A stretch of DNA of 55,391 bases, filler included, from Platydemus manokwari (taxonomy: Eukaryota): assembly GCA_037951405.1 (NCBI GenBank). It is 5 parts of 5 records of this genome, joined end to end, with 100 filler letters (N's around TTAATTAATTAA, not from the genome) between each part and the next. Parts side by side here need not be neighbours in the genome. Positions count along the whole stretch, not along the records: positions 9,789 to 21,436 come from JBBMOY010548885.1; 4 more parts are not named here. One strand, given 5' to 3'. The notes under the pieces are model-generated. The model was not told the DNA's origin. It saw only the letters and a list, made by a program, of their open reading frames with translations, and did not search any database. The translations under genes were made by a program, and so were the position numbers. Below, one piece after another: positions 9,789 to 21,436 of the stretch (position 1 is the stretch's first letter; each line of letters opens with the position of its first letter).

Positions 9789-11153
9789 ACAGATGTTGTA
9801 TTTTCATGAAATAGTGATTAATTTATTTACTATGAATTATTTTATGAATTTAGACGTGTAAAATGAATATAATTATTTTGATAAATAATTTCACGTGTAT
9901 TTTACAAATAGGAATTTTTTTAAGTTTGAGAAAATCTAAAATTAAAAATCTGAAATTTCTGCAGTACCAATAAATATCATTCAAGATTAAGATAGTTGTA
10001 ACAATTCAATTTCCAGGAAAATATCGCTAGGAAAATATCAATATCACATGACAAAATGCAAATATTAAAATTTAAATATGCATAACCTGGTATTTCTTAC
10101 TCACCTTATAATAATTTTTTATCTTAAAAATATTAATATTGAAATTAATATCATCTTATATAACATCTGTAGGACATAATAATATGGGATTTTTAATAAC
10201 CAAAATTCGATGTAATTATTCTCCTAACCTAAAAAACTTTCCTCCAATAGGTAAATTATATTTAAAAAACATACCAATTAAATAAAATCATTTAAAAAAA
10301 TGATTAAACAAATCATTCTCAATTGCATGTCAAGTACGTATTAACAAAAATTAAAGAGTCACCACAGATTATTCATTTCTCATCGCATTAAGAATATTTC
10401 ATCATATCCACATGAGGTACTCAATGTCTCAATAATGTTCTAGAAAAATAGTACAAAGTTGCGTTTATTCTTAAGAAACACAATTCGAAGAAGTACTTTA
10501 ACTGGTTTTTTGTGTACAGAAAAGTTGCTAATTCGCTGCTTTTGTCCACCACATACAAATTAGCAAAGAAAATGAATTCAAAACACATACTAAAACAGAA
10601 AATAAATGCTGGCAACAATACAATTGTTGCAATAACAGTAGTCAATAATAATAATAGTAATAATAAGATTAATATCCTGATAATAAACATAATATCAAAA
10701 TATATTGAAAGTAATATTAAAAAACTGTACACACGCATACAATCACGCGCACACATACAAGTGCAGGCTGAAATCGTAAATAATTAAAATACGAATAAGA
10801 GCAGCGTGCTGAAACGACTACTGAATGGCGAAAATAGCGCAGATATGCAAGCGATTCATAAATGCGCAGAGCTGCACTGATGGTAGAAATTATAAATAGT
10901 AGGAACAATAGAGATTGTAATAGTAAACAAATAAATAACGATTATATATAACTATAAAATATAATGATAATATATAATGATAATAATATTAAGTGATATA
11001 AACAAAGAGAGAGACAAGTAGTAACCAATTGAAAAACATGTATACAAATATTATCATAGAATATATACATCAACATATACACTTGCACACACGAATAATC
11101 GATATCAACAGATCAATAATAATAATAATAATAGACAAGGTGGTGACGACATA

Positions 11154-14100
11154 TCATGACCATGTTGGTTGGCCTCGATACGGATATGCAGTTGTGGTGA
11201 TGGCAGCTGACAATGAAATAGGAGAATTATTGATCGCGGAGCAATTTTGTCTTAAGCTGCTGTTGTTGTTCGTGACGGTCAAGTTTGGTTGGACGTTGCT
11301 AGGCTGGACTTGACCAGAAGAGTTGGGATTCTTCAGTTCCAACTCAACAAGAAGCGAAAAATGATCACTGTTGAAATGGACGTGTGGTGCCCCGACGATC
11401 TTCTGTTGTTCAAACCAACTTTCTGGAATTTGCTTGAGATTTCCTAATAGATTCAAGTGATTCTTCGAGAAGAATATGTAATCAATTATTCCTCGGAAAT
11501 CGTATCTGAAAATGTTAAATAATAATAAAAAATTATCAATAATAATAATAATAATGGTAATGAGGTCAATAATATAGGTCAACTAATGAATAAAATCAGT
11601 TGCAATAATCATGAAAAGGTGCCAATAGCACCATACACACTAAGAGGAACTGCACTAGTCGCCCTCCTACCCAGTGACATTCAGGAATATAAATATATTT
11701 CACATAAAACTGGCATGAAATTAAGCCACTAATTGATATGTTGTCATAGTAACAGAGAAATATCTTACGTGTAATTGGACCATTTCAAACCACTCTCGTT
11801 TTCATCTTTGTATGCACGATCGAAATTGAAGCGATGCTTTAGCACATCGTTTTCGACGAATTCCTCTTGAATTGCACTCCACTCATTAAATAGATATTTG
11901 TCCCCAAAATCCCTGAAATCCACGTGACTACATTCAACCTCACCCTTAATCAAATAATCCACCACCCCGGAATCAGGAAGTGAGTTCAAATCACCGCAAA
12001 GGATTACAGGCATCTACAAAATTAGTCTCATATAACATCACAACGATCGATTAGCATTATTACTTCACTAGGACTAAGATATGGCATATTTTCGGTTTTA
12101 AAGTAGTCTCGAATATAGTTCCACAATTCTGATGACCAAAACAATGTCTGGATGAGCTTAACATCACTATATTCGGGATCCCAATGAATGTGACCGGTTG
12201 ATACACATAATTTACGCTTATTCATTTCTTGATAAACATTGATATCGATAAGGGAAAGTTGTTTAATCAAATAGTAGCTCACTTGGATCTTTGGCCTCTA
12301 AAATAATGCTAAGTGCTACATTATCCCTATTCATGACACGATTCAATAATTCCGGTGCTGGATTTTTACTGACACCAATGCATGATAGCATAAATTCATG
12401 TGTTACATGATGCACTTTTTCAAAGCTAGTAAACAACAAATCAATCATTTATATATATTAAAAAAAATAAATGATGAATATTAACGAATTACAAGTACTG
12501 GTTGAATGGGTGTGATGTAGAATCGAAAAAATATCGATAAAAAAGGAGAATGAATGACGGTTAACATGTCATTTTTATTTATTATTCACTATTAATAAAT
12601 AATGATTCATTATTGACCTAATGATGTACATTTGCACTTATGATGGATAAATTCACCATACTTTCTCATCACACACGATACTGATATCGATTTATTCTAA
12701 TAATTACTTCCAAGATACCAAAAGGTAAATAAAAATTTTAATAAATAAAAGTGATGAAGACTAAATAAGAAAAAAGGAAAATGCGAAATAACACAGCAGT
12801 GAAAACCAAAAATAATAGAAAAGGCGGAAGGCGAACAAATTCCCGTAAAGACCAAAAGTTAATTTTGTTATTTAACAAAGAAATTTTTGATCAAAGGAAA
12901 GAAAAGGCTTGAGGGAAACACATAACGCCATCAAAGGTAAAGATCGATTGATTGATGTGCAAATTATAAGTGCATTTCACAGATGATTACATTAATCTTT
13001 AATTTGAGCAGATCATAGAATATTTACAATAGAATTGATCAGATGTGCATTGGCCACTAATATATCTCAATGATGAGACGACTAAATAATATTTTTAATG
13101 ATAAAGATGATCTAGATATAGACGGCTAATCGAACAAATAGACCGTGAATCTCATCTCATCAAATGATTTTCTGTTTAGATAACAAAACAATAGCTATTG
13201 ATTATATTATTTACAAAAATCAATAATAAACAAACCATTCAACTTTCCAAAAAATAGCGCAGCCGTCTACGCATTTGGAATCGGATTCGTGCATTGTTCT
13301 CGATCGACTTTTTGGTACAAATAAGCCATCATAATTTCGCTTTCTCAATTCCAAAGAAAACACATTTTCATATTGGGACGTCTCCAATTCCTAATAATGT
13401 AAGAACAAATATAACAATAATAATATTTATATAAAATTGAAAACAAAAATAATAAGACACACCGAGTGAGTCACATGAAAAGAAAATTATGAGTGGATGT
13501 GGTGTCGTTAAAAAAGTGCTCGAGGAAAACAAGTGAACGTCGATTGACTAAGAAGCGTCCAAAAATCGATACACCACCTCCTCCCTGCCACAGTGAAAAT
13601 CAATGCAAAGCACTCCAAAAATATGCTCGATGAATCAACAAAACAGAAATAAAAGTACACGCGTCGTATAACTCTATCAAATTATAGGTTGGCAAAATTC
13701 TATTAATAGAAACACTTAAGCAAAATCATCAGATAGAAAATTTATTCTAAACTAATGAGATATCGACACAATAAATATTCAAGAAATATATTAGAGCATG
13801 GCAAATAAAGCCATGTAAAATACAGAACAATCGATTTATCACATAGTTCTAGCTAGAATTTTGCATGGGAGTTTCGTACAAATGGTAAATGGAATTTATC
13901 TATGTGTATAAATCATTGAAACTGCAATGCTGGCAACCAAACGTACATGTCTTTTGTTATTGTTATTACTATATTTCCATGTGTACATATGGCATGATTT
14001 TTTACCGTGATAAACTACCGACCGTAGCTTAGTGTAGATGTACTGTAGCAACCAATATTCACACTTACCTGTAAACAAATAATGTCTGCCTTATACTTCC

Positions 14101-17100
14101 ATATTTCTTCGAGAATACCACGTTTACGATATTCCCAATCTAGAGCAAAAGCCGGACAATATGGATACATGTTAGTTGTAGCATATTTTTGGCAGAGGAC
14201 ATTGTAGCACATTAAAGTAAATGACACTGAATAGTTAGGATTAAATTTAAATATTCCAAATACAATATATAAAATGTTAACAATTGATTAAAGAAATTGT
14301 GTATACAGCACAATAAATTGATTTATTATTTAATGAAATGATAATATTAAAAAATAATCAATAATTTTAAATAAAATAATCAATAATTTTGATTAAAAAT
14401 GTTAATATTAAGAATATTACAAGTGTCAAGAATTGATTAAATAGATTATTGATCAAATATAATTATTTATATTAAAATAATATATAGATTTAATTAATAC
14501 AATATAAATATATTTCGTTGAAATCAATAATTTCCAATAAAAATATTGATTTAAAATAATCACATGTTATTATTGATTTCTTAAATACCAACGACAACAA
14601 TTTTTTTAAAAGAAATGAAAACATTAATGATTACTTCCATCAGAGGGTTCTTCAATGATGTGCCAATTACGACTCGGTGGAGCAACAATTTTATCTAAAT
14701 AAAACATGTTAAATTTAATAATAATTTTCGAAACTAAAAATGATTCAATAAAAAAAATAATGTATCGATTAAGAAATAATGGCTATACCGGCAATAACAT
14801 ACACATACATAGAAATAATAAAAAATAAAATGTTGCCGATAAAAAGAATCAACATAAAGAATTAATTAACCTAAAAAAATTAATATCTTATCTTCTACTC
14901 ACAATAGTTGAGGAATCTTTGAGGAATTAAACAAGTTTTCAACGAATCAAAGATATCATTGATACGTGATGACTGAATGGGTTCGGCAATAACGCAGGCT
15001 GATTTAGATATGAGATCGGAATATTCATTATAATTACAAACTTTACAAGAGCTGCAACTGTAATTATAATTTGAAAAATAACTAGGCGGTGTCTTTCGAC
15101 ATTCATAGCAAAAAGTTAAATTAGAGTGACAAAAGAAACACTTTTTAAGGCTATTCGGTATTAAAACTGATAAATAGGGTCTAAGAGAAAGGCTGGAAAA
15201 ATTATTGAGTGAGAAATTAGTGCTGCTATAATTTTGATTGATAAAGCTCTGTTGTTTTAGAGAAATAGAGTGTGATAAGGAATTTGTAAAATCGACTGAT
15301 GAATATGATGTAGAATAATGTCGCGATGAAATTCCTGACAACTTTTCTACCTGGAATGTTACATTTTTACAATTGGTCAAATCAACACTAATCCCATTAC
15401 AGAAAGCCGACTCTGAACTATCGTTGTCAATAGGATTCGAAAATTCAAATGTAAAAGACAATCTCTCTGAAGAATACGATGAAACTCTTTCTGGCATCTT
15501 AGGCTCTGAACCTTCACTAGCTGACTTCACTCGAATTCTATCTGATTTAATGTTGATATCTTCTTCACCAAATCGAGATTCCAACACTGCATCAGTAGAT
15601 TGAATTCTTTGACGTTTTAAATAATTGCACACTGGACACTTATCTTTTTCATAATTGATCTTCTCTACTCTTTGGTTCGGTATATAATGAAATAAAGTGT
15701 GCAATCCCGAATTCGAATTTTGTACATCATTTGAAATCGATTCTTTATCCAGTGACTTTGCTAATTGATTTACAACTTCTGTCATTGTTGTTTCTTTTTC
15801 CAGAGAAGATGTGGAAAATTCTTTGTTCGATTTTGAGTTTTCATTATTTGCTTCAATCTTTGCTAGAGAATTATTTTTAGAATTTTTCCTAAAAGATTTG
15901 ACAGAATTCTGATTGTAATTTGCGAGTTTCAATTTCCGACCCTTTGATGAATTTTTCAATGTAAAAATATCCAATTCATTTGTATTGGAATAATGAGAAG
16001 TTCCGTTCTTGAGTTTTCTGTTGTTTCTCATTTAGTGAAATAAAACGTTCCGATTAGCACGAAATTCAAATTATAAGTAATGCAATTCAGTTTGCTTTCG
16101 GAGAATTGATAATTAAGAAATACCCAAATGTTATAAATTAAAATTAGTTGCTAGAAGAAATTACAGAAATTCAGAGAAGAAAATCAGCTATATAAAGGAC
16201 AGAAAAATCTCAATTTGTATAGTTAAAAACTGTCCAATAGCGACACAGTAATCGTCAATCAATATTCACAAAGACATTATCTGAAGCCTATTAGTTGATG
16301 TTATCATGAGTCACAATTAGTAGTATTTGCTGCCTTCTCAAAATTATAACAAAGGCATTAGTAATCAAATATGAATGGAGCACAATACAGAATGAATAAT
16401 TAATTTATTTATTGTAAAATTCAACAAGCGCGTTACTGAAGTGCTTCATTGTTAAAATATTTGACTATAAAAATACATTGATTCCTTCAAGTTTTTACAC
16501 ATATTTTTTTTTATTTATTCAGCATCATTACCGAAACCGTGCGCATCACAAATAAATGAGATCCATTATAAAAACAGATCGAAAAATACGAAGAAAATTG
16601 CTATAAAATTCCTGAAAAACAAGACGGGACTATTCATCAGTATCATGTATAGAGATGTGAGTAAATATTTATGAATACATACACGCACACCCAGACACAG
16701 TCGCATACAAACACACGCATGAATCCACAAATTCTCTGTAACACAAAAATACTCGATAAAACTGTAGCGTGATTACACACCCCCGCTGAAAATCATGGTT
16801 GAAAGAAATATTCAATTTTCCGTTTCTTATTCATATTAACACGTGTTTCAATCAAACCGCAAATGAGTCACAACCCTTTGTTATCAATATCCCTCATCAA
16901 CATTTTCAAGTGCTCACTCATACAATGAAAAATAACTTACTTTTGATATAATATTGTTCCAGCAGTTGTCGAATCATATTTTTACCATTAGATTCGAGGT
17001 CATATATTTGAGCCGTAAGATTGGTCAGTGGATTGCTGCGTAAATCTAAATTGTGAGAAAAAATTGCACTTTAATTAATTCTCAGAGGTGGAGTGAAATG

Positions 17101-20100
17101 TGATAGCGATAGAATTTTCAAAAGAATCGCAATGAATAAAGTTCAATAGAATGTCAGATAATTGAAGAATAGTTATTTTAGTTTTGTTCGATAAATTTCA
17201 TTCATTAACGCCATTCATGTTTGAAGCATTATAAAAGCGTTATTCAAATGATAAGTGATTATTGAATTTATTAATAGAAACCGACAATCAAATAAATATG
17301 CTAATGGAAATAATCAGAAATAGAGATCAGAATTTATTAAACAAATTCAGAATAAATCATTATTATCGTATTAACCCTCATATTGGGTACTAAATTTGAC
17401 AAAATGACATAAATCAGACAAATTAAATGAATTAAAAAAATATCGTTAATAAAATTTTAATATTTCATAAAAATCATCCTTTTTATTATACATATCATGT
17501 TAATTTTTTTCGTTATCTAAATATCTTACAAGATTCATTTACTGTTAATAGCAATCAATTGAAAACATTTACAATCTCATAACAAGTATGATCGAAATTC
17601 AATTTTATGCTGCTTTAACAAATCATATGATTGTTAATCAAGATTATATGAAAAATAGAAGATGATTTACTAGAACTGGTTATGTAGATCGCAGAAAAAT
17701 ATTAATGCTAACTGTGAATCAATCGACAATATCCAAATGGCAACTGATATAAGAGAACAGCAATAATATGGGGAGCATAATGTTTAAATCAAAATCATCA
17801 AATTAAACTGATCAATAAAGGGAGATATTGTAAAAACTAATTATCATAATCACAAATGAATATCAAATCCAATTTTACTCATTTTTTTTCGTTTCATTAA
17901 AAATTTCTGTCAAATATCTAATAAAAATTCAGAAAATAATTTAAAACCATTTAATTCGAATTTTCTACAAATTTTTAATGACATTTAGAATAGAAAAATT
18001 GAACACGGGTTTGAAAAAATTGAATTAATTATCAAATCAACAAAATTAGACGGTTATTATTGTGAGAATTTATTGTTTGTTTTTACAATATCATTTATTT
18101 TTATTAAATAAATTACTTTTAACAGCAAATAATGATAATATTTTATATAAATAATAATAATAATATTAATGCACATTATTTTATATATGAAAATATACAT
18201 AAAATCGATCAAGAAATAATGATAAAAGTGAAAAATATTTTCTCATTTTTAAATGATATTTCATAAACAATCAATAACAGTAATTTTAGCAATTAATCAA
18301 TCAATTATAACAACTTCCCGTTAATTTTCATAACGAAACTAATTTTCAATCGAACAAATGATTCTTAAAGAAGGATAACTTAAGAAATTAATGGTGAACT
18401 AATATTTCCATTGATCGTAAAAGCGGATAGATCTTATGAATGTGAAAAGCTATGGGATAAATTGAATGATGGGAATCATTTAACAGAACTAATCCATTGA
18501 TATGAAAAAATAATTCCATTTTAATGAAGATGAAAGAAATAATGAATCTGTAAAAATCTAAAATAATAATAATAATTCCAAAGAAATATTTTTTACCATA
18601 AAAATGAATTGATTATATCAAGAAGAATAAATTCATGCAAATCGTCCGAATATACACAGAAGATCGGATTTGTAGTGATGGCTGGGTGGGTTGCAGAGAG
18701 ATTAAAAAGGAAATTATTTATCCGAATATATAAATCTCGATTAAGAAAAGAGAAATATCAATTTCAAATCCAAAAATAAACAAATTTATTACCAGAAAAA
18801 CAAACAATTATACAACAAAAATAAGATAAATTTCATTTATTCCATAATGTTTAATCAAGAGAAATTATCTCAGTTGATTTTTTAAACAGAATAATTTTTC
18901 ATTGGGATAAAATGTATTGGTTTTGGGAAAGTTTGTTGATTAACATCAATTTAGAGCCTTTCATCAGCATATCGATTTAATAGAGATAAATATAATAAAT
19001 GGCATCAAACAATAAAATTGGTAAAAATTAGAATGATTCATATAAATATGATGAAAGAGAAAATGAAAAAAAATAATAAATGATAGAGAAATGTTATCAA
19101 TATTAATGAATTAAATTAAACTTGAGAAACATATCGATTTTCTACATGAAAATATCAAAAATAATCAATTTTATTATAAAAAACAATCATTATTTTTAGA
19201 CTGATGATATAAAGAAAGAAAATTAAAGAATCCTTCAAGAAATGAGCACATATATGGGAATAGAATAGATTTAAAAGGGAAAATTTTTAATCAAAAGTAG
19301 AAAAATGGTTTAATATTGAAAAATAATATCGATTTTTCTACAAAAAAGTAATCAACATAAATGAAACCAATAAAGAAAACTGCAATGCAGTAAAAAGAAT
19401 TTCACAACAAAAAACACTGTCGATATATGGGAAACAGATTTGACAAAATTCGTAATTGATTTATTCAAAACATGTCGATGTGTAGGTGGCGGGTGAATGA
19501 GAGGAGAATGAAAGAGATTAAGATGGGAAAAAATTAATCCAAATGATATCATTCACTTTCACTCATAAACATAAAATATATAAAAGAATTAATTATGTTT
19601 GAGAGAAGGATTTTAACAAGATTATCCCAGTAACACAAAAAAATAATTAAATATTAATAAAAACAACAAAAAATCGATAGAAAATAACAATTTATTAGAG
19701 GGCCCCTACAGAAAAATATTAGAAAGCAGCTTGTACAAACCATGTGATCAATGTGGTGATAAGCAGGGGGGGTCAGGTTGGATTTGAAATGGGAAATATT
19801 TATCAAAACAAATTACAAAAACAACCCAAAAATTCATTGAAAATCCAAAATAAACAAATTAATTAACGGAAAATTAAACAATTCGCCCCACCAAAATAGA
19901 GATGATTTCATAAATAATAATACGGTTAGACAATTTGAATGAAAATTTCCCATTAATATATCAACATTATTGAATAAAATACGATATTCACTGTTTATAA
20001 TATCTCGAAATAATAATAATAAATTTAATTAATGTTTTTAATTGAAAGAAATCCCAAAATTTCCCCCATCGGGGGAACACATTTGCATGCAATCCTATAA

Positions 20101-20884
20101 TATCAAAACCACACAAATTTCTCCCCCATTTTTTTTTCTGAAATCGAAAAACAAAAACTATATCCACGAGTAAAGGAGATGGAAATGAAAATTTTGTGTA
20201 CGTGTGCAAAAATATATCAATTTGATAAGATGATATTTTATCGATAATAACCAGCTGTGCTATGAGATTGAATGACAATTACTGACAATTAAATCGATTG
20301 ATTTCACAACAAAAATCACTTAATTTCATTATTGAATTAATTAAATGTTAAAATTAAATTGAACTTTTTTTTAAAAAATTAAATTAATGAAATCAATAAG
20401 CACAAAGCAAATGAATATTTAAAATTACCCAGCATTTTAACGTTGTGAAGAAATCCAAACGTACACGGAACTTCTTTGATCTTGTTATTAGATAGTAGAA
20501 TATTTCTCAATTCAAACATATAACCCATCTGAACGGGAAGCGATGAAATATTATTATAACTTGCATCAAGATTTTTTAAATTTTCCAGTTTACAAATTTC
20601 TTGCGGTAAAGAATCAAATAAGTTATTCTTGAGAACTAATGTTGTGATAAATGTATGAGAACAGATTTTGATTGGAAGAGTTTTCAAATAACCTGAAATA
20701 CATACATATATAATGGTCTTATTATTTTTAATAAAAACCATGTACCAGTCAATTGTAAACGAAACCAATCGCTAGTTTTCCCCTTCTCGATTTCTTCCTT
20801 AGTCATTGCTCGACTAGGCATATTAAATTCTGCTGACCCATATGCGCTTTGTTTTCGTGTAGATGAAATATATTCACTTGACAT
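11154..20884 (-). CDS. CNOT6: CCR4/CNOT6-type deadenylase (LRR + EEP nuclease), 594 aa, 10 exons: 20884-20746, 20692-20429, 17045-16941, 14694-14635, 14226-14069, 13390-13236, 12425-12283, 12227-12064, 12013-11769, 11505-11154
   Basis: All junctions are GT-AG and in frame (total 1785 nt). LRR repeats are followed by EEP motifs CYNVLC.KYAT..MY.YCP..AL.WEYRK, ADIICLQE, DGCAIFWK, HIHWDPEYSDVKL, CGDLNSLPDSGV, FRGIIDYIF and SDH. Confidence 0.96.
14903..16031 (-). CDS. Putative alternative first coding exon of CCR4 (376 codons + 1 nt; Ser/Asn-rich with Cys clusters)
   Basis: Long ORF on the same strand inside CCR4 intron 3. An in-frame TAA directly precedes the ATG. A GTGAGT donor at 14902-14897 is phase 1, matching the phase-1 acceptor of exon 4 (14694). 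Confidence 0.7.
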
Positions 20885-21436
20885 CTAAATTTTAAAAAAT
20901 TTTATTTTAAATCTATTCGTCGAATTGTTTATTACTCAAATGATTATAAATATAACTATTACTTAAAAATTGCTATAAAAATTGCTTTAATAATATGGAG
21001 TTATTTTAATAAAAGCAGAGGTTGACAAATAATTTAACAATAGGAATCAAAAATACTACAAAATTAAAACAAATTTGTAAATGACACAAGGTCACAAATT
21101 TAAAGAAATTCGAATGAAATGCGATGATTTCATTAAATATTTTAATTGGTTTTCGCAATCAATTTTCTATTTTTTAAAATTGTCTATAAGAATATGATTT
21201 ACTAAATTTAGTTTATTTTCAAAAATATTAAAAATGACTATTTACTTTACTCTACTTTCTTATAAATTTCGCTTTTAGTTCATTTAAATTTGCGTTCCTT
21301 TAAAAGTACCAAAATAGATGTAAGCATAAAAAATTGAAAATAATAAAAAATTATGCGAAAATGTTAATATTTCATATAAGAATTTGTTTAATAATTAAAT
21401 TAATTTAGAAAATTACTTACAAAATTAATAATATTG

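What the first reader, a model, noticed from the sequence alone, without database searches (positions are those of the whole stretch)
14695..16031. Intronic 1.13-kb ORF predicts an LRR-less CCR4 isoform with a novel Cys-rich N-terminus
Seen: a 378-codon ORF lies on the CCR4 strand in the intron between the last LRR exon (ends 16941) and the first nuclease-proximal exon (starts 14694). Its ATG is preceded by an in-frame TAA. Just before its stop is a consensus GTGAGT donor (14902) in phase 1, the phase exon 4 needs. Splicing out 208 nt gives an 801-aa protein in which 376 new residues replace the whole LRR. These are Ser/Asn-rich and contain CPVC, CFFC..FCYEC and CSSCKVC clusters, possibly zinc-binding. 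Established: the CCR4 LRR binds CAF1 and tethers the nuclease to CCR4-NOT. Inference: one locus could encode both a complex-bound deadenylase and a CCR4-NOT-independent one with its own targeting module.
Basis: partly seen in the sequence, partly recalled or inferred. Interest (0 to 1): 0.8.

Follow-up and report, generated by a model that had tools for sequence, protein, structure and literature searches.

The report
Conserved orphan exon inside CCR4 intron
A 378-codon reading frame inside an intron of a CCR4 deadenylase gene is a real, selected coding exon with its own conserved upstream control block, and it probably splices onto the nuclease exons to give a CCR4 without its leucine-rich repeat, though no RNA data were available to show this.

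Summary
On the minus strand, 16031-14895 is a 378-codon ORF in the intron between the last LRR exon (17045-16941) and the first linker/nuclease exon (14694-14640) of a CCR4/CNOT6-like gene. It is not chance: P about 7e-14, and shuffles never exceed 154 codons.

It is conserved in the same place in the one relative found (L001, genomic). Amino-acid identity is 80%, synonymous sites are saturated, and dN is 0.11. All 14 cysteines are invariant.

Both species share three further features:
- a 200-nt non-coding block upstream, 88-98% identical, with TATA-, CCAAT- and acceptor-like sequences;
- an ATG-free leader;
- a GTGAGT donor overlapping the stop, in the phase exon 4 needs.

Only five GTRAGT sites occur on this strand in 11.6 kb. 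Two are known CCR4 donors and one is this site.

The last ~300 nt of the ORF plus 50 nt beyond it are also constrained at the nucleotide level.

No Pfam, PDB or transposon match was found, and there was no other homologue among 1.8 billion representatives.

The only run that holds the stretch is DNA, so splicing to exon 4 is inferred, not shown. My odds are about 0.55 for an alternative first exon giving an LRR-less CCR4, and about 0.3 for an independent nested gene. Zinc binding and independence from CCR4-NOT are untested.

The parts
16941..17045 (-). CCR4 exon 3, the last LRR exon, with donor AAA A|GTAAGT in phase 1
   Evidence: The orthologous exon in L001 (245-349) has 29/34 aa identical and the same phase.
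16125..16342 (-). Conserved non-coding block upstream of the ORF. It holds AP-1-like TGACTCA (16313-16307), ATTGG (16238-16234), TATATAG (16194-16188), and a pyrimidine tract plus AG (16160-16151).
   Evidence: 88-98% identity to L001 in 50-nt windows, while the rest of the intron cannot be aligned. No excess RNA structure, z = 0.0. No Rfam hit. The motif names come from my own knowledge of consensus sequences and are inference.
16032..16150 (-). Presumed 5' leader. It is poorly conserved, has indels, and has no ATG in either species.
   Evidence: The first ATG downstream of the TATA-like element is the ORF start in both the window and L001.
14903..16031 (-). Coding exon of 376 codons plus 1 base. 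It is S/N-rich, with four conserved islands (about residues 1-36, 83-152, 162-243, 265-376) and 14 invariant Cys.
   Evidence: 80% aa identity to P0001, dN 0.11, pS 0.77 (saturated). Island 85-151 is 98.5% identical in protein but only 31% identical at third codon positions.
14897..14902 (-). Consensus 5' splice site GTGAGT in phase 1. The TAG stop of the unspliced frame is 14897-14895.
   Evidence: It is one of only 5 GTRAGT sites on this strand in 11.6 kb. Those at 16940 and 14068 are CCR4 donors. L001 has only two, at the exon 3 donor and at the ORF end. Chance of one falling in the last 12 nt is about 0.005.
14850..15203 (-). Zone of nucleotide-level constraint covering the Cys-rich coding end, the donor and the first ~50 nt of the intron
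   Evidence: 82-100% nt identity, with a 68-nt identical run at 15059-14992. Third-position identity is 74%, against 31-45% elsewhere. In L001, GC3 is 0.43 here against 0.68 in the rest of the ORF. RNA fold z = -1.98, which is marginal.
14695..14902 (-). Proposed 208-nt intron joining the ORF exon to CCR4 exon 4
   Evidence: Inference from donor, acceptor and phase. There are no RNA reads. The only A[AT]TAAA hexamer in it is at 14719.
14640..14694 (-). CCR4 exon 4, the linker before the EEP nuclease domain (KIVAPPSRNWHIIEEPSDG). This is the acceptor shared by both proposed isoforms.
   Evidence: The next exon, 14236-14069, matches CNOT6L residues 29-82 of 3NGN.

Best explanation
The ORF is a lineage-restricted, protein-coding alternative first exon of the CCR4 gene.

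Transcription is proposed to start at an internal promoter in intron 3, the conserved block with TATA- and CCAAT-like elements at about 16340-16160. Translation starts at ATG 16031. The conserved GTGAGT at 14902 is then spliced to the exon 4 acceptor at 14694, which the canonical LRR-containing mRNA also uses.

The product would be about 800 aa. A 376-residue module, Ser/Asn-rich and carrying conserved Cys clusters, replaces the LRR and sits directly on the linker and complete EEP nuclease domain.

Shown: the exon is coding, selected, syntenic in two species, has a conserved start, and has a conserved in-phase donor.

Inferred: the promoter, the splice to exon 4, and any function of the new module such as targeting, metal binding, or binding or not binding CAF1.

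The extra nucleotide-level constraint around the donor suggests that use of this splice site is regulated. Some transcripts may remain unspliced and yield the free 378-aa protein.
For: (1) The exon is real. P(chance ORF) is about 7e-14 and the shuffle maximum is 154 codons. It is 80% identical to P0001 with dN 0.11 and saturated synonymous sites. Its islands are as conserved as the nuclease exon: 98.5% against 96% aa, with third-position identity of only 31-45%.

(2) Its position is the same in a second species. L001 carries the LRR exon, an unalignable intron, the conserved block and the ORF.

(3) It behaves as a first exon. Conservation starts at the ATG, the frame is closed upstream, and there is no ATG between the TATA-like element and the start in either species.

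(4) The donor. GTGAGT lies exactly at the ORF end in both species. It is one of 5 such sites in 11.6 kb, two of which are bona fide CCR4 donors. The chance of this is about 0.005, multiplied by 1/3 for the matching phase.

(5) The only A[AT]TAAA hexamer between the stop and exon 4 lies 25 nt before exon 4. L001 has none in the 212 nt after its stop. A transcript is therefore likely to run into exon 4, whose acceptor is known to be functional.

(6) The junction falls at the natural domain boundary, the linker before the EEP domain.

(7) There is no transposon or virus signature. Pfam, NCBIfam and PDB gave nothing and there are no terminal repeats.
Against: There is no transcript evidence of any kind. 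The only run that holds the locus is DNA, with contigs colinear with the genome.

No junction-spanning protein exists in the word-indexed collection or among 1.84 billion representatives. However, length limits and 50% clustering could hide an 800-aa isoform.

The whole 3' end of the ORF is ultraconserved, so conservation of GTGAGT is not specific to the donor. The same bases also encode Cys-Glu-stop.

A 1.13-kb intronless ORF with its own promoter, inside a gene of short exons, is also the typical look of a nested gene.

The conserved block also reads as a good 3' splice site, so the 5' end of the mRNA is uncertain.

Only one relative is available for comparison.
Confidence: 0.55

Rival explanations
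1. Independent nested gene. The same promoter drives a single-exon mRNA that ends shortly after the TAG at 14895 and encodes a free 378-aa orphan protein ending in ...LNYCE. The GTGAGT is simply the sequence coding Cys-Glu-stop. The conserved 50 nt after the stop is a 3' UTR element.
For: The ORF is an intronless 1.13 kb with its own conserved upstream block and an ATG-free leader. Cys377, Glu378 and the stop are conserved. Conservation continues about 50 nt past the stop, as a 3' UTR could. The gene caller in the collection records it as a stand-alone 402-aa product. No fusion protein was found.
Against: A perfect, in-phase donor at the last codons is unlikely by chance, at about 0.002. There is no canonical poly(A) hexamer in the conserved 3' stretch. 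The only one lies 25 nt before exon 4. Any read-through into exon 4 would meet a donor and acceptor pair 208 nt apart, which would be expected to splice.
Confidence: 0.3
2. Internal 'poison' or bicistronic exon. The pyrimidine tract and AG at 16160-16151 act as a 3' splice site, or as a spliced-leader acceptor if the organism trans-splices. In that case 16150-14903 would be included in transcripts from the upstream CCR4 promoter. The LRR frame would stop after a few codons. The ORF would be translated only by reinitiation, or after trans-splicing.
For: TTTCTTCTAG|C with an upstream CTGAT branch-like motif is perfectly conserved. From exon 3 in phase 1 the frame closes before the ATG in both species (read). 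Conservation of the intronic flanks on both sides of the exon is typical of regulated cassette exons.
Against: Strong purifying selection on the whole protein from Met1 argues for efficient translation as a first ORF. A 1.25-kb internal exon is atypical for this gene. The block extends about 190 nt upstream of the AG and contains TATA- and CCAAT-like elements at promoter-like spacing. Trans-splicing in this organism is unknown.
Confidence: 0.08
3. Relic of a transposon, virus or other inserted DNA, or a non-functional chance ORF.
For: It is an orphan sequence with no homologues beyond one relative. It has low-complexity composition and a low 'recognition' score in the protein atlas.
Against: P(chance) is about 7e-14. 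It sits at the same place in two species with saturated synonymous divergence and dN 0.11. It has no transposase, integrase or RT match, no terminal repeats, and no other copies in the piece.
Confidence: 0.02

Closest known systems
Canonical CCR4 / CNOT6 / CNOT6L / Drosophila twin (LRR + EEP deadenylase of CCR4-NOT)
   Same: The host gene has LRR exons and an EEP nuclease 60-70% identical to human CNOT6L in the exon tested. The proposed isoform keeps the whole linker and EEP part.
   Different: In the proposed isoform the LRR is replaced by an unrelated 376-aa module. The LRR is what binds CAF1/POP2 and tethers CCR4 to the complex (PMC4033318). I found no such isoform described in the reviews I searched (PMC12746107, PMC4033318).
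LRR-less CCR4-type nucleases: Nocturnin, Angel, 3635/PDE12
   Same: An EEP catalytic domain of the CCR4 type without an LRR (PMC4033318). The EEP exon here also hits PDE12, Nocturnin and ANGEL2 weakly.
   Different: Those are separate paralogous genes with diverged catalytic domains. Here the very same nuclease exons as canonical CCR4 would be reused through an internal promoter.
[quoted passage not shown]
   Same: A Cys-rich N-terminal domain stands in place of the LRR, upstream of the EEP domain. In plants it binds the PXLXP motif of CAF1 (PMC7105381, citing Chou et al. 2017).
   Different: There is no sequence match to zf-MYND or any other Pfam zinc finger. The Cys spacing is different (C-x2-C-x6-C-x2-C-x14-C-x2-C-x2-C). 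Plants have only this form, whereas here it would coexist with an LRR form from one locus.
Nested (intronic) genes and alternative-promoter isoforms in animals generally
   Same: A same-strand ORF with its own conserved upstream block inside a host intron.
   Different: The terminal in-phase consensus donor and the strong nucleotide-level constraint across the exon-intron junction are not expected of a simple nested gene.

Membership tests
CCR4/CNOT6 deadenylase (host gene) | EEP (Exo_endo_phos) nuclease domain of the CCR4 type | tested here: met
   Exon 14236-14069 matches CNOT6L (3NGN) at E 1.2e-20, then CNOT6 and yeast Ccr4. Further exons align to relatives' EEP ORFs that carry PF03372.
CCR4/CNOT6 deadenylase (host gene) | N-terminal leucine-rich repeat that binds CAF1 | tested here: met
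   LRR exons 20693-20427 match LRR proteins at E down to 6.5e-41. Exon 3 (17045-16941) completes the repeat. Binding to CAF1 itself was not testable.
Proposed LRR-less CCR4 isoform | mRNA joining 14903 to 14694 | not testable with these tools
   No RNA run holds the locus, and the one holder is DNA contigs. Only the donor, acceptor and phase were verified.
Zinc-finger domains (Pfam: zf-MYND, RING, B-box, LIM, etc.) | Significant match to a curated zinc-finger profile, or a confident fold | tested here: not met
   No Pfam family at E up to 10 for the C-terminal 100 aa. The only hit is Rad50_zn_hook at E 0.13 around CPVC. The PDB profile search gave nothing. AlphaFold pLDDT was 30 for the whole ORF and 44 for the C-terminal part.
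Zinc-finger domains (generic) | Conserved paired CxxC ligands | tested here: met
   Four CxxC pairs and all 14 Cys are invariant between the two species. This is suggestive only, because the whole region is 98% identical.
Transposable element or viral gene | Transposase, RT, integrase or capsid homology; terminal repeats; multiple copies | tested here: not met
   The only homologue is the syntenic orthologue.
Protein-coding exon under selection | dN much lower than dS against an orthologue, with indels in multiples of three | tested here: met
   pN 0.10 against pS 0.77. All gaps are in frame. In the last 313 nt, 28 of 33 mismatches are at third positions.

The most novel reading that the evidence does not exclude
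One CCR4 locus makes two deadenylases from two promoters. One is the canonical form, tethered by its LRR to CAF1. The other is a lineage-specific form whose LRR is replaced by an orphan module with conserved Cys clusters, acting as a new targeting or docking domain. The ultraconserved ~350-nt element spanning the exon end and donor would act as a switch between splicing to the nuclease exons and release of a free 378-aa protein.
Probability: 0.2. Interest if true: 0.7.

Novelty: new variant of a known kind. Interest (0 to 1): 0.5.

Why it matters
In animals and yeast, CCR4 is thought to act only through its LRR-CAF1 tether. LRR-less relatives such as Nocturnin, Angel and PDE12 are separate genes with other roles.

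An internal-promoter isoform that puts the authentic CCR4 nuclease behind a different, strongly conserved N-terminal module would be a natural experiment. It would show how a deadenylase can be retargeted, or docked by other means as plant CCR4 is through its MYND-like finger.

Even if the ORF proves to be only a nested gene, it is a well-supported orphan protein. Its islands are as conserved as the nuclease itself. It also carries an unexplained stretch of synonymous-site constraint that resisted a large GC shift between the two species.

The value is limited because the lineage is unidentified, only one relative exists, and everything beyond the DNA is inference.

Tried and rejected
- RNA evidence. 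The look-up of sequencing runs gave one holder that is not on record as RNA. Read laying showed contigs colinear with the genome through introns. The listed 'joints' have 20-21-nt sides in AT-rich repeats and are not splice junctions.
- Homologues. The word search with the whole ORF found only P0001, and with the C-terminal 100 aa found nothing. The exhaustive HMMER profile search of 1.84 billion representatives found only P0001. The protein atlas gave no usable hit. Two degenerate-codon pattern scans of metagenome contigs gave 0 hits. The exact-sequence look-up found the ORF not on record.
- Families. Pfam, NCBIfam and a PDB profile search gave nothing meaningful.
- Structure. Two AlphaFold jobs gave pLDDT 30 and 44, too poor for a fold search.
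- Structured RNA. There is no Rfam family apart from a chance mir-297 hit on a TG-rich stretch at E 0.94. The upstream block has z = 0.0 and the 3' zone z = -1.98. A 12-bp hairpin in the window at about 15070-15020 is not kept in L001.
- Dual coding of the 3' zone. The +1 frame is open for 58 codons in both species, but its residues change freely outside the identical run, so I rejected this.
- Transposon. There are no terminal repeats.
- Organism. I could not identify it. The CCR4-exon search returned only unnamed Logan contigs, and a search for the run accession in papers found nothing.
- Other relatives. Contigs L003-L007 (50% identity in the nuclease exon) do not reach the intron in question, so presence or absence of the ORF there is unknown.
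- Complex prediction was not used. No CAF1 sequence of this organism is available, and I make no binding claim.
Full report
**What is there**

The usable piece (9789-21436, 27.6% G+C) carries a CCR4/CNOT6-type gene on the minus strand.
- The N-terminal exon has an ATG at about 20884.
- The LRR exons are about 20693-20427 and 17045-16941.
- After a 2.25-kb intron comes a short linker exon (14694-14640, ...KIVAPPSRNWHIIEEPSDG).
- EEP nuclease exons then run down to a stop at about 11157.
- Exon 14236-14069 matches human CNOT6L at E 1e-20, and 20693-20427 is clearly LRR.

Inside the 2.25-kb intron, on the same strand, lies an ATG-to-TAG ORF of 378 codons, 16031-14895.
- an in-frame TAA directly before the ATG;
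- GTGAGT at 14902 overlapping the stop;
- phase 1 at both this site and the exon 3 donor;
- a 208-nt interval to exon 4;
- Ser/Asn richness (66 S and 43 N);
- the CPVC, CFFC-x6-CYEC and CSSCKVC clusters.

**More than chance**

At this composition a codon is a stop with probability 0.077. The probability of 378 open codons is therefore about 7e-14. In 200 shuffles of the piece the longest open stretch was 154 codons.

**Conservation**

The word-indexed search found one relative, P0001, at 80% identity over the whole length. An exhaustive HMMER profile search of 1.84 billion representatives found nothing else.

P0001 is encoded on a 2.9-kb genomic contig, L001. This contig also carries the orthologous last LRR exon, which has 29/34 residues identical and the same AAA A|GTAAGT donor. 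It continues with an intron that cannot be aligned to the window, then a conserved block, then the ORF. The arrangement is therefore syntenic.

The two genomes have diverged strongly in base composition. GC3 of the ORF is 0.28 in the window and 0.62 in L001. Synonymous sites are saturated (pS 0.77), while dN is 0.11. All indels are in frame.

For calibration:

| Region | aa identity | third-position identity |
|---|---|---|
| CCR4 nuclease exon from the same run (L002) | 96% | 45% |
| ORF residues 85-151 | 98.5% | 31% |

This is the signature of selection on the protein. All 14 cysteines are invariant.

P0001's nine extra N-terminal residues start at a GTG chosen by the gene caller. Nucleotide conservation begins exactly at the shared ATG.

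**How the exon is expressed: the 5' side**

Upstream of the ORF, at 16342-16125, lies a block that is 88-98% identical between species. The surrounding intron is at random-level identity.

The block shows no excess RNA folding (z = 0.0) and has no Rfam match. It contains several recognisable sequences:
- TGACTCA;
- ATTGG, about 45 nt upstream of TATATAG (16194-16188);
- a pyrimidine tract and AG at 16160-16151.

Reading these as AP-1, CCAAT and TATA elements is my inference from consensus sequences.

Between the TATA-like element and the ORF start the sequence is poorly conserved and has indels. It contains no ATG in either species. Together with the closed frame upstream, this marks the ORF as the first coding exon of its own transcript.

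The same block could instead serve as a 3' splice site or trans-splice acceptor. In that case inclusion from the upstream CCR4 promoter would terminate the LRR frame within a few codons in both species. I rate this lower, because the whole protein from Met1 is under strong selection.

**How the exon is expressed: the 3' side**

GT[AG]AGT occurs only five times on this strand in 11.6 kb, against 5.3 expected from composition.
- Two of the sites are the exon 3 and exon 5 donors of CCR4.
- One sits on the last codons of the ORF.
- L001 has only two such sites, at the exon 3 donor and at the ORF end.

The chance of such a site within the last 12 nt is about 0.005, and the matching phase adds a factor of 1/3.

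The stop lies two codons after the donor, as happens at ordinary exon ends in AT-rich introns. Exon 3 behaves the same way.

The only AATAAA or ATTAAA hexamer between the stop and exon 4 is at 14719, 25 nt before exon 4. L001 has none in the 212 nt after its stop.

A transcript that reaches exon 4 would present a perfect donor and a proven acceptor 208 nt apart. The join falls at the domain boundary, the linker before the EEP domain. These points make the alternative-first-exon model the best reading.

No RNA data exist for a test. The single run that holds the stretch consists of DNA contigs that run straight through the introns. No junction-spanning protein fragment is in the collections.

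I did not build or search the joined product. The length limits of the word search, and the 50% clustering of the big library, could hide an annotated 800-aa isoform.

**An extra layer of constraint**

The last ~300 nt of the ORF and the first ~50 nt after the donor (15203-14850) are 82-100% identical. They include a 68-nt identical run at 15059-14992.
- Third-position identity is 74% here, against 31-45% elsewhere.
- In the GC-shifted species, GC3 falls from 0.68 to 0.43 in this part.
- Identity drops to 42% beyond 14850.

Dual coding is unlikely. RNA structure is only marginal (z = -1.98), and a local hairpin is not conserved.

Constraint straddling an exon-intron junction is what regulated splice sites show. 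I therefore suggest that use of this donor is controlled, and that both a free 378-aa protein and the nuclease fusion may be made. This is inference.

**What the module is**

It is unknown. No match was found in Pfam, NCBIfam or the PDB, and the atlas gave no neighbour. The AlphaFold models are of low confidence, at pLDDT 30 and 44, so I ran no fold search.

Four conserved islands are separated by variable low-complexity linkers. Four invariant CxxC pairs are compatible with metal binding but do not prove it.

That follows from the role of the LRR in binding POP2/CAF1 (PMC4033318). It is not the only option. Plant CCR4 proteins lack the LRR and use a Cys-rich zf-MYND-like N-terminus to bind CAF1 (PMC7105381). 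The present module does not match zf-MYND.

**Rivals**

| Reading | Confidence | Main points |
|---|---|---|
| Alternative first exon of CCR4 (best explanation) | 0.55 | See above |
| Independent nested gene | about 0.3 | Fits the intronless ORF with its own promoter and the conserved CE-stop. Must treat the in-phase consensus donor as coincidence and needs an unseen poly(A) site within 200 nt. |
| Cassette or trans-spliced exon | about 0.08 | Discussed under the 5' side above. |
| Transposon relic or chance ORF | about 0.02 | Excluded by synteny, selection, lack of any mobile-element homology, and lack of terminal repeats. |

**Novelty and verdict**

I found no description of an LRR-less CCR4 isoform with a substitute N-terminal module in the reviews searched (PMC12746107, PMC4033318).

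The finding is a new variant of known kinds: an alternative-promoter isoform or nested gene, and CCR4-type nucleases without an LRR. The headline claim, a second form of the deadenylase, is plausible but unproven. The organism remains unidentified.

Noticed in passing
window 16125-16342 (-); L001 1118-1335: A ~200-nt non-coding block, 88-98% identical between two species whose synonymous sites are saturated. It contains TATA-, CCAAT- and AP-1-like motifs and a strong acceptor-like tract. It shows no RNA-structure signal.
   Followed up: partly
window 14850-15203 (-): Synonymous sites are constrained across the last ~100 codons of the ORF and 50 nt past its donor/stop. There is a 68-nt identical run at 15059-14992, third-position identity is 74%, and this part resisted the GC3 shift in the relative. 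The cause is unexplained.
   Followed up: partly
window 16650-16690 and 16793-16806 (-); L001 ~735-775 and 538-551: Two small conserved islands lie in the otherwise unalignable part of intron 3. One is CGTGTrTGTATkCAyAAATATTTrCTCAC, next to a TG-rich tract that gave the chance mir-297 hit. The other is an exact 14-mer, TTCTTTCAACCATG.
   Followed up: no
window whole piece vs L001/L002: There is an extreme compositional shift between close relatives. GC3 of the same nuclease exon is 0.45 here against 0.87 in L002, while the proteins are 96% identical. The window genome is strongly AT-biased at 27.6% G+C.
   Followed up: partly
window 11160-11330 (-) and 10421-10787: The CCR4 C-terminal tail after the EEP domain is Asn/Ser/Thr-rich low complexity. 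Relatives L004 and L005 also have a long Ser/Thr-rich tail. Downstream AAT/ATT-type repeats create spurious ORFs on both strands (111 aa on the minus strand, 91 aa on the plus strand).
   Followed up: no
window 10104 and 21420 (-): Two further consensus GTRAGT sites on the CCR4 strand lie outside the known coding exons. One is after the stop codon region and one is upstream of the first coding exon. They may be UTR introns or chance.
   Followed up: no
L003-L007 (runs SRR22558374-88): A more distant CCR4 homologue, 50% identical in the 82-aa exon and from a genome of ~48-50% G+C, has fused nuclease exons (a 171-aa ORF with PF03372). None of the contigs reaches the LRR/linker intron, so whether the orphan exon exists there is unknown.
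   Followed up: partly
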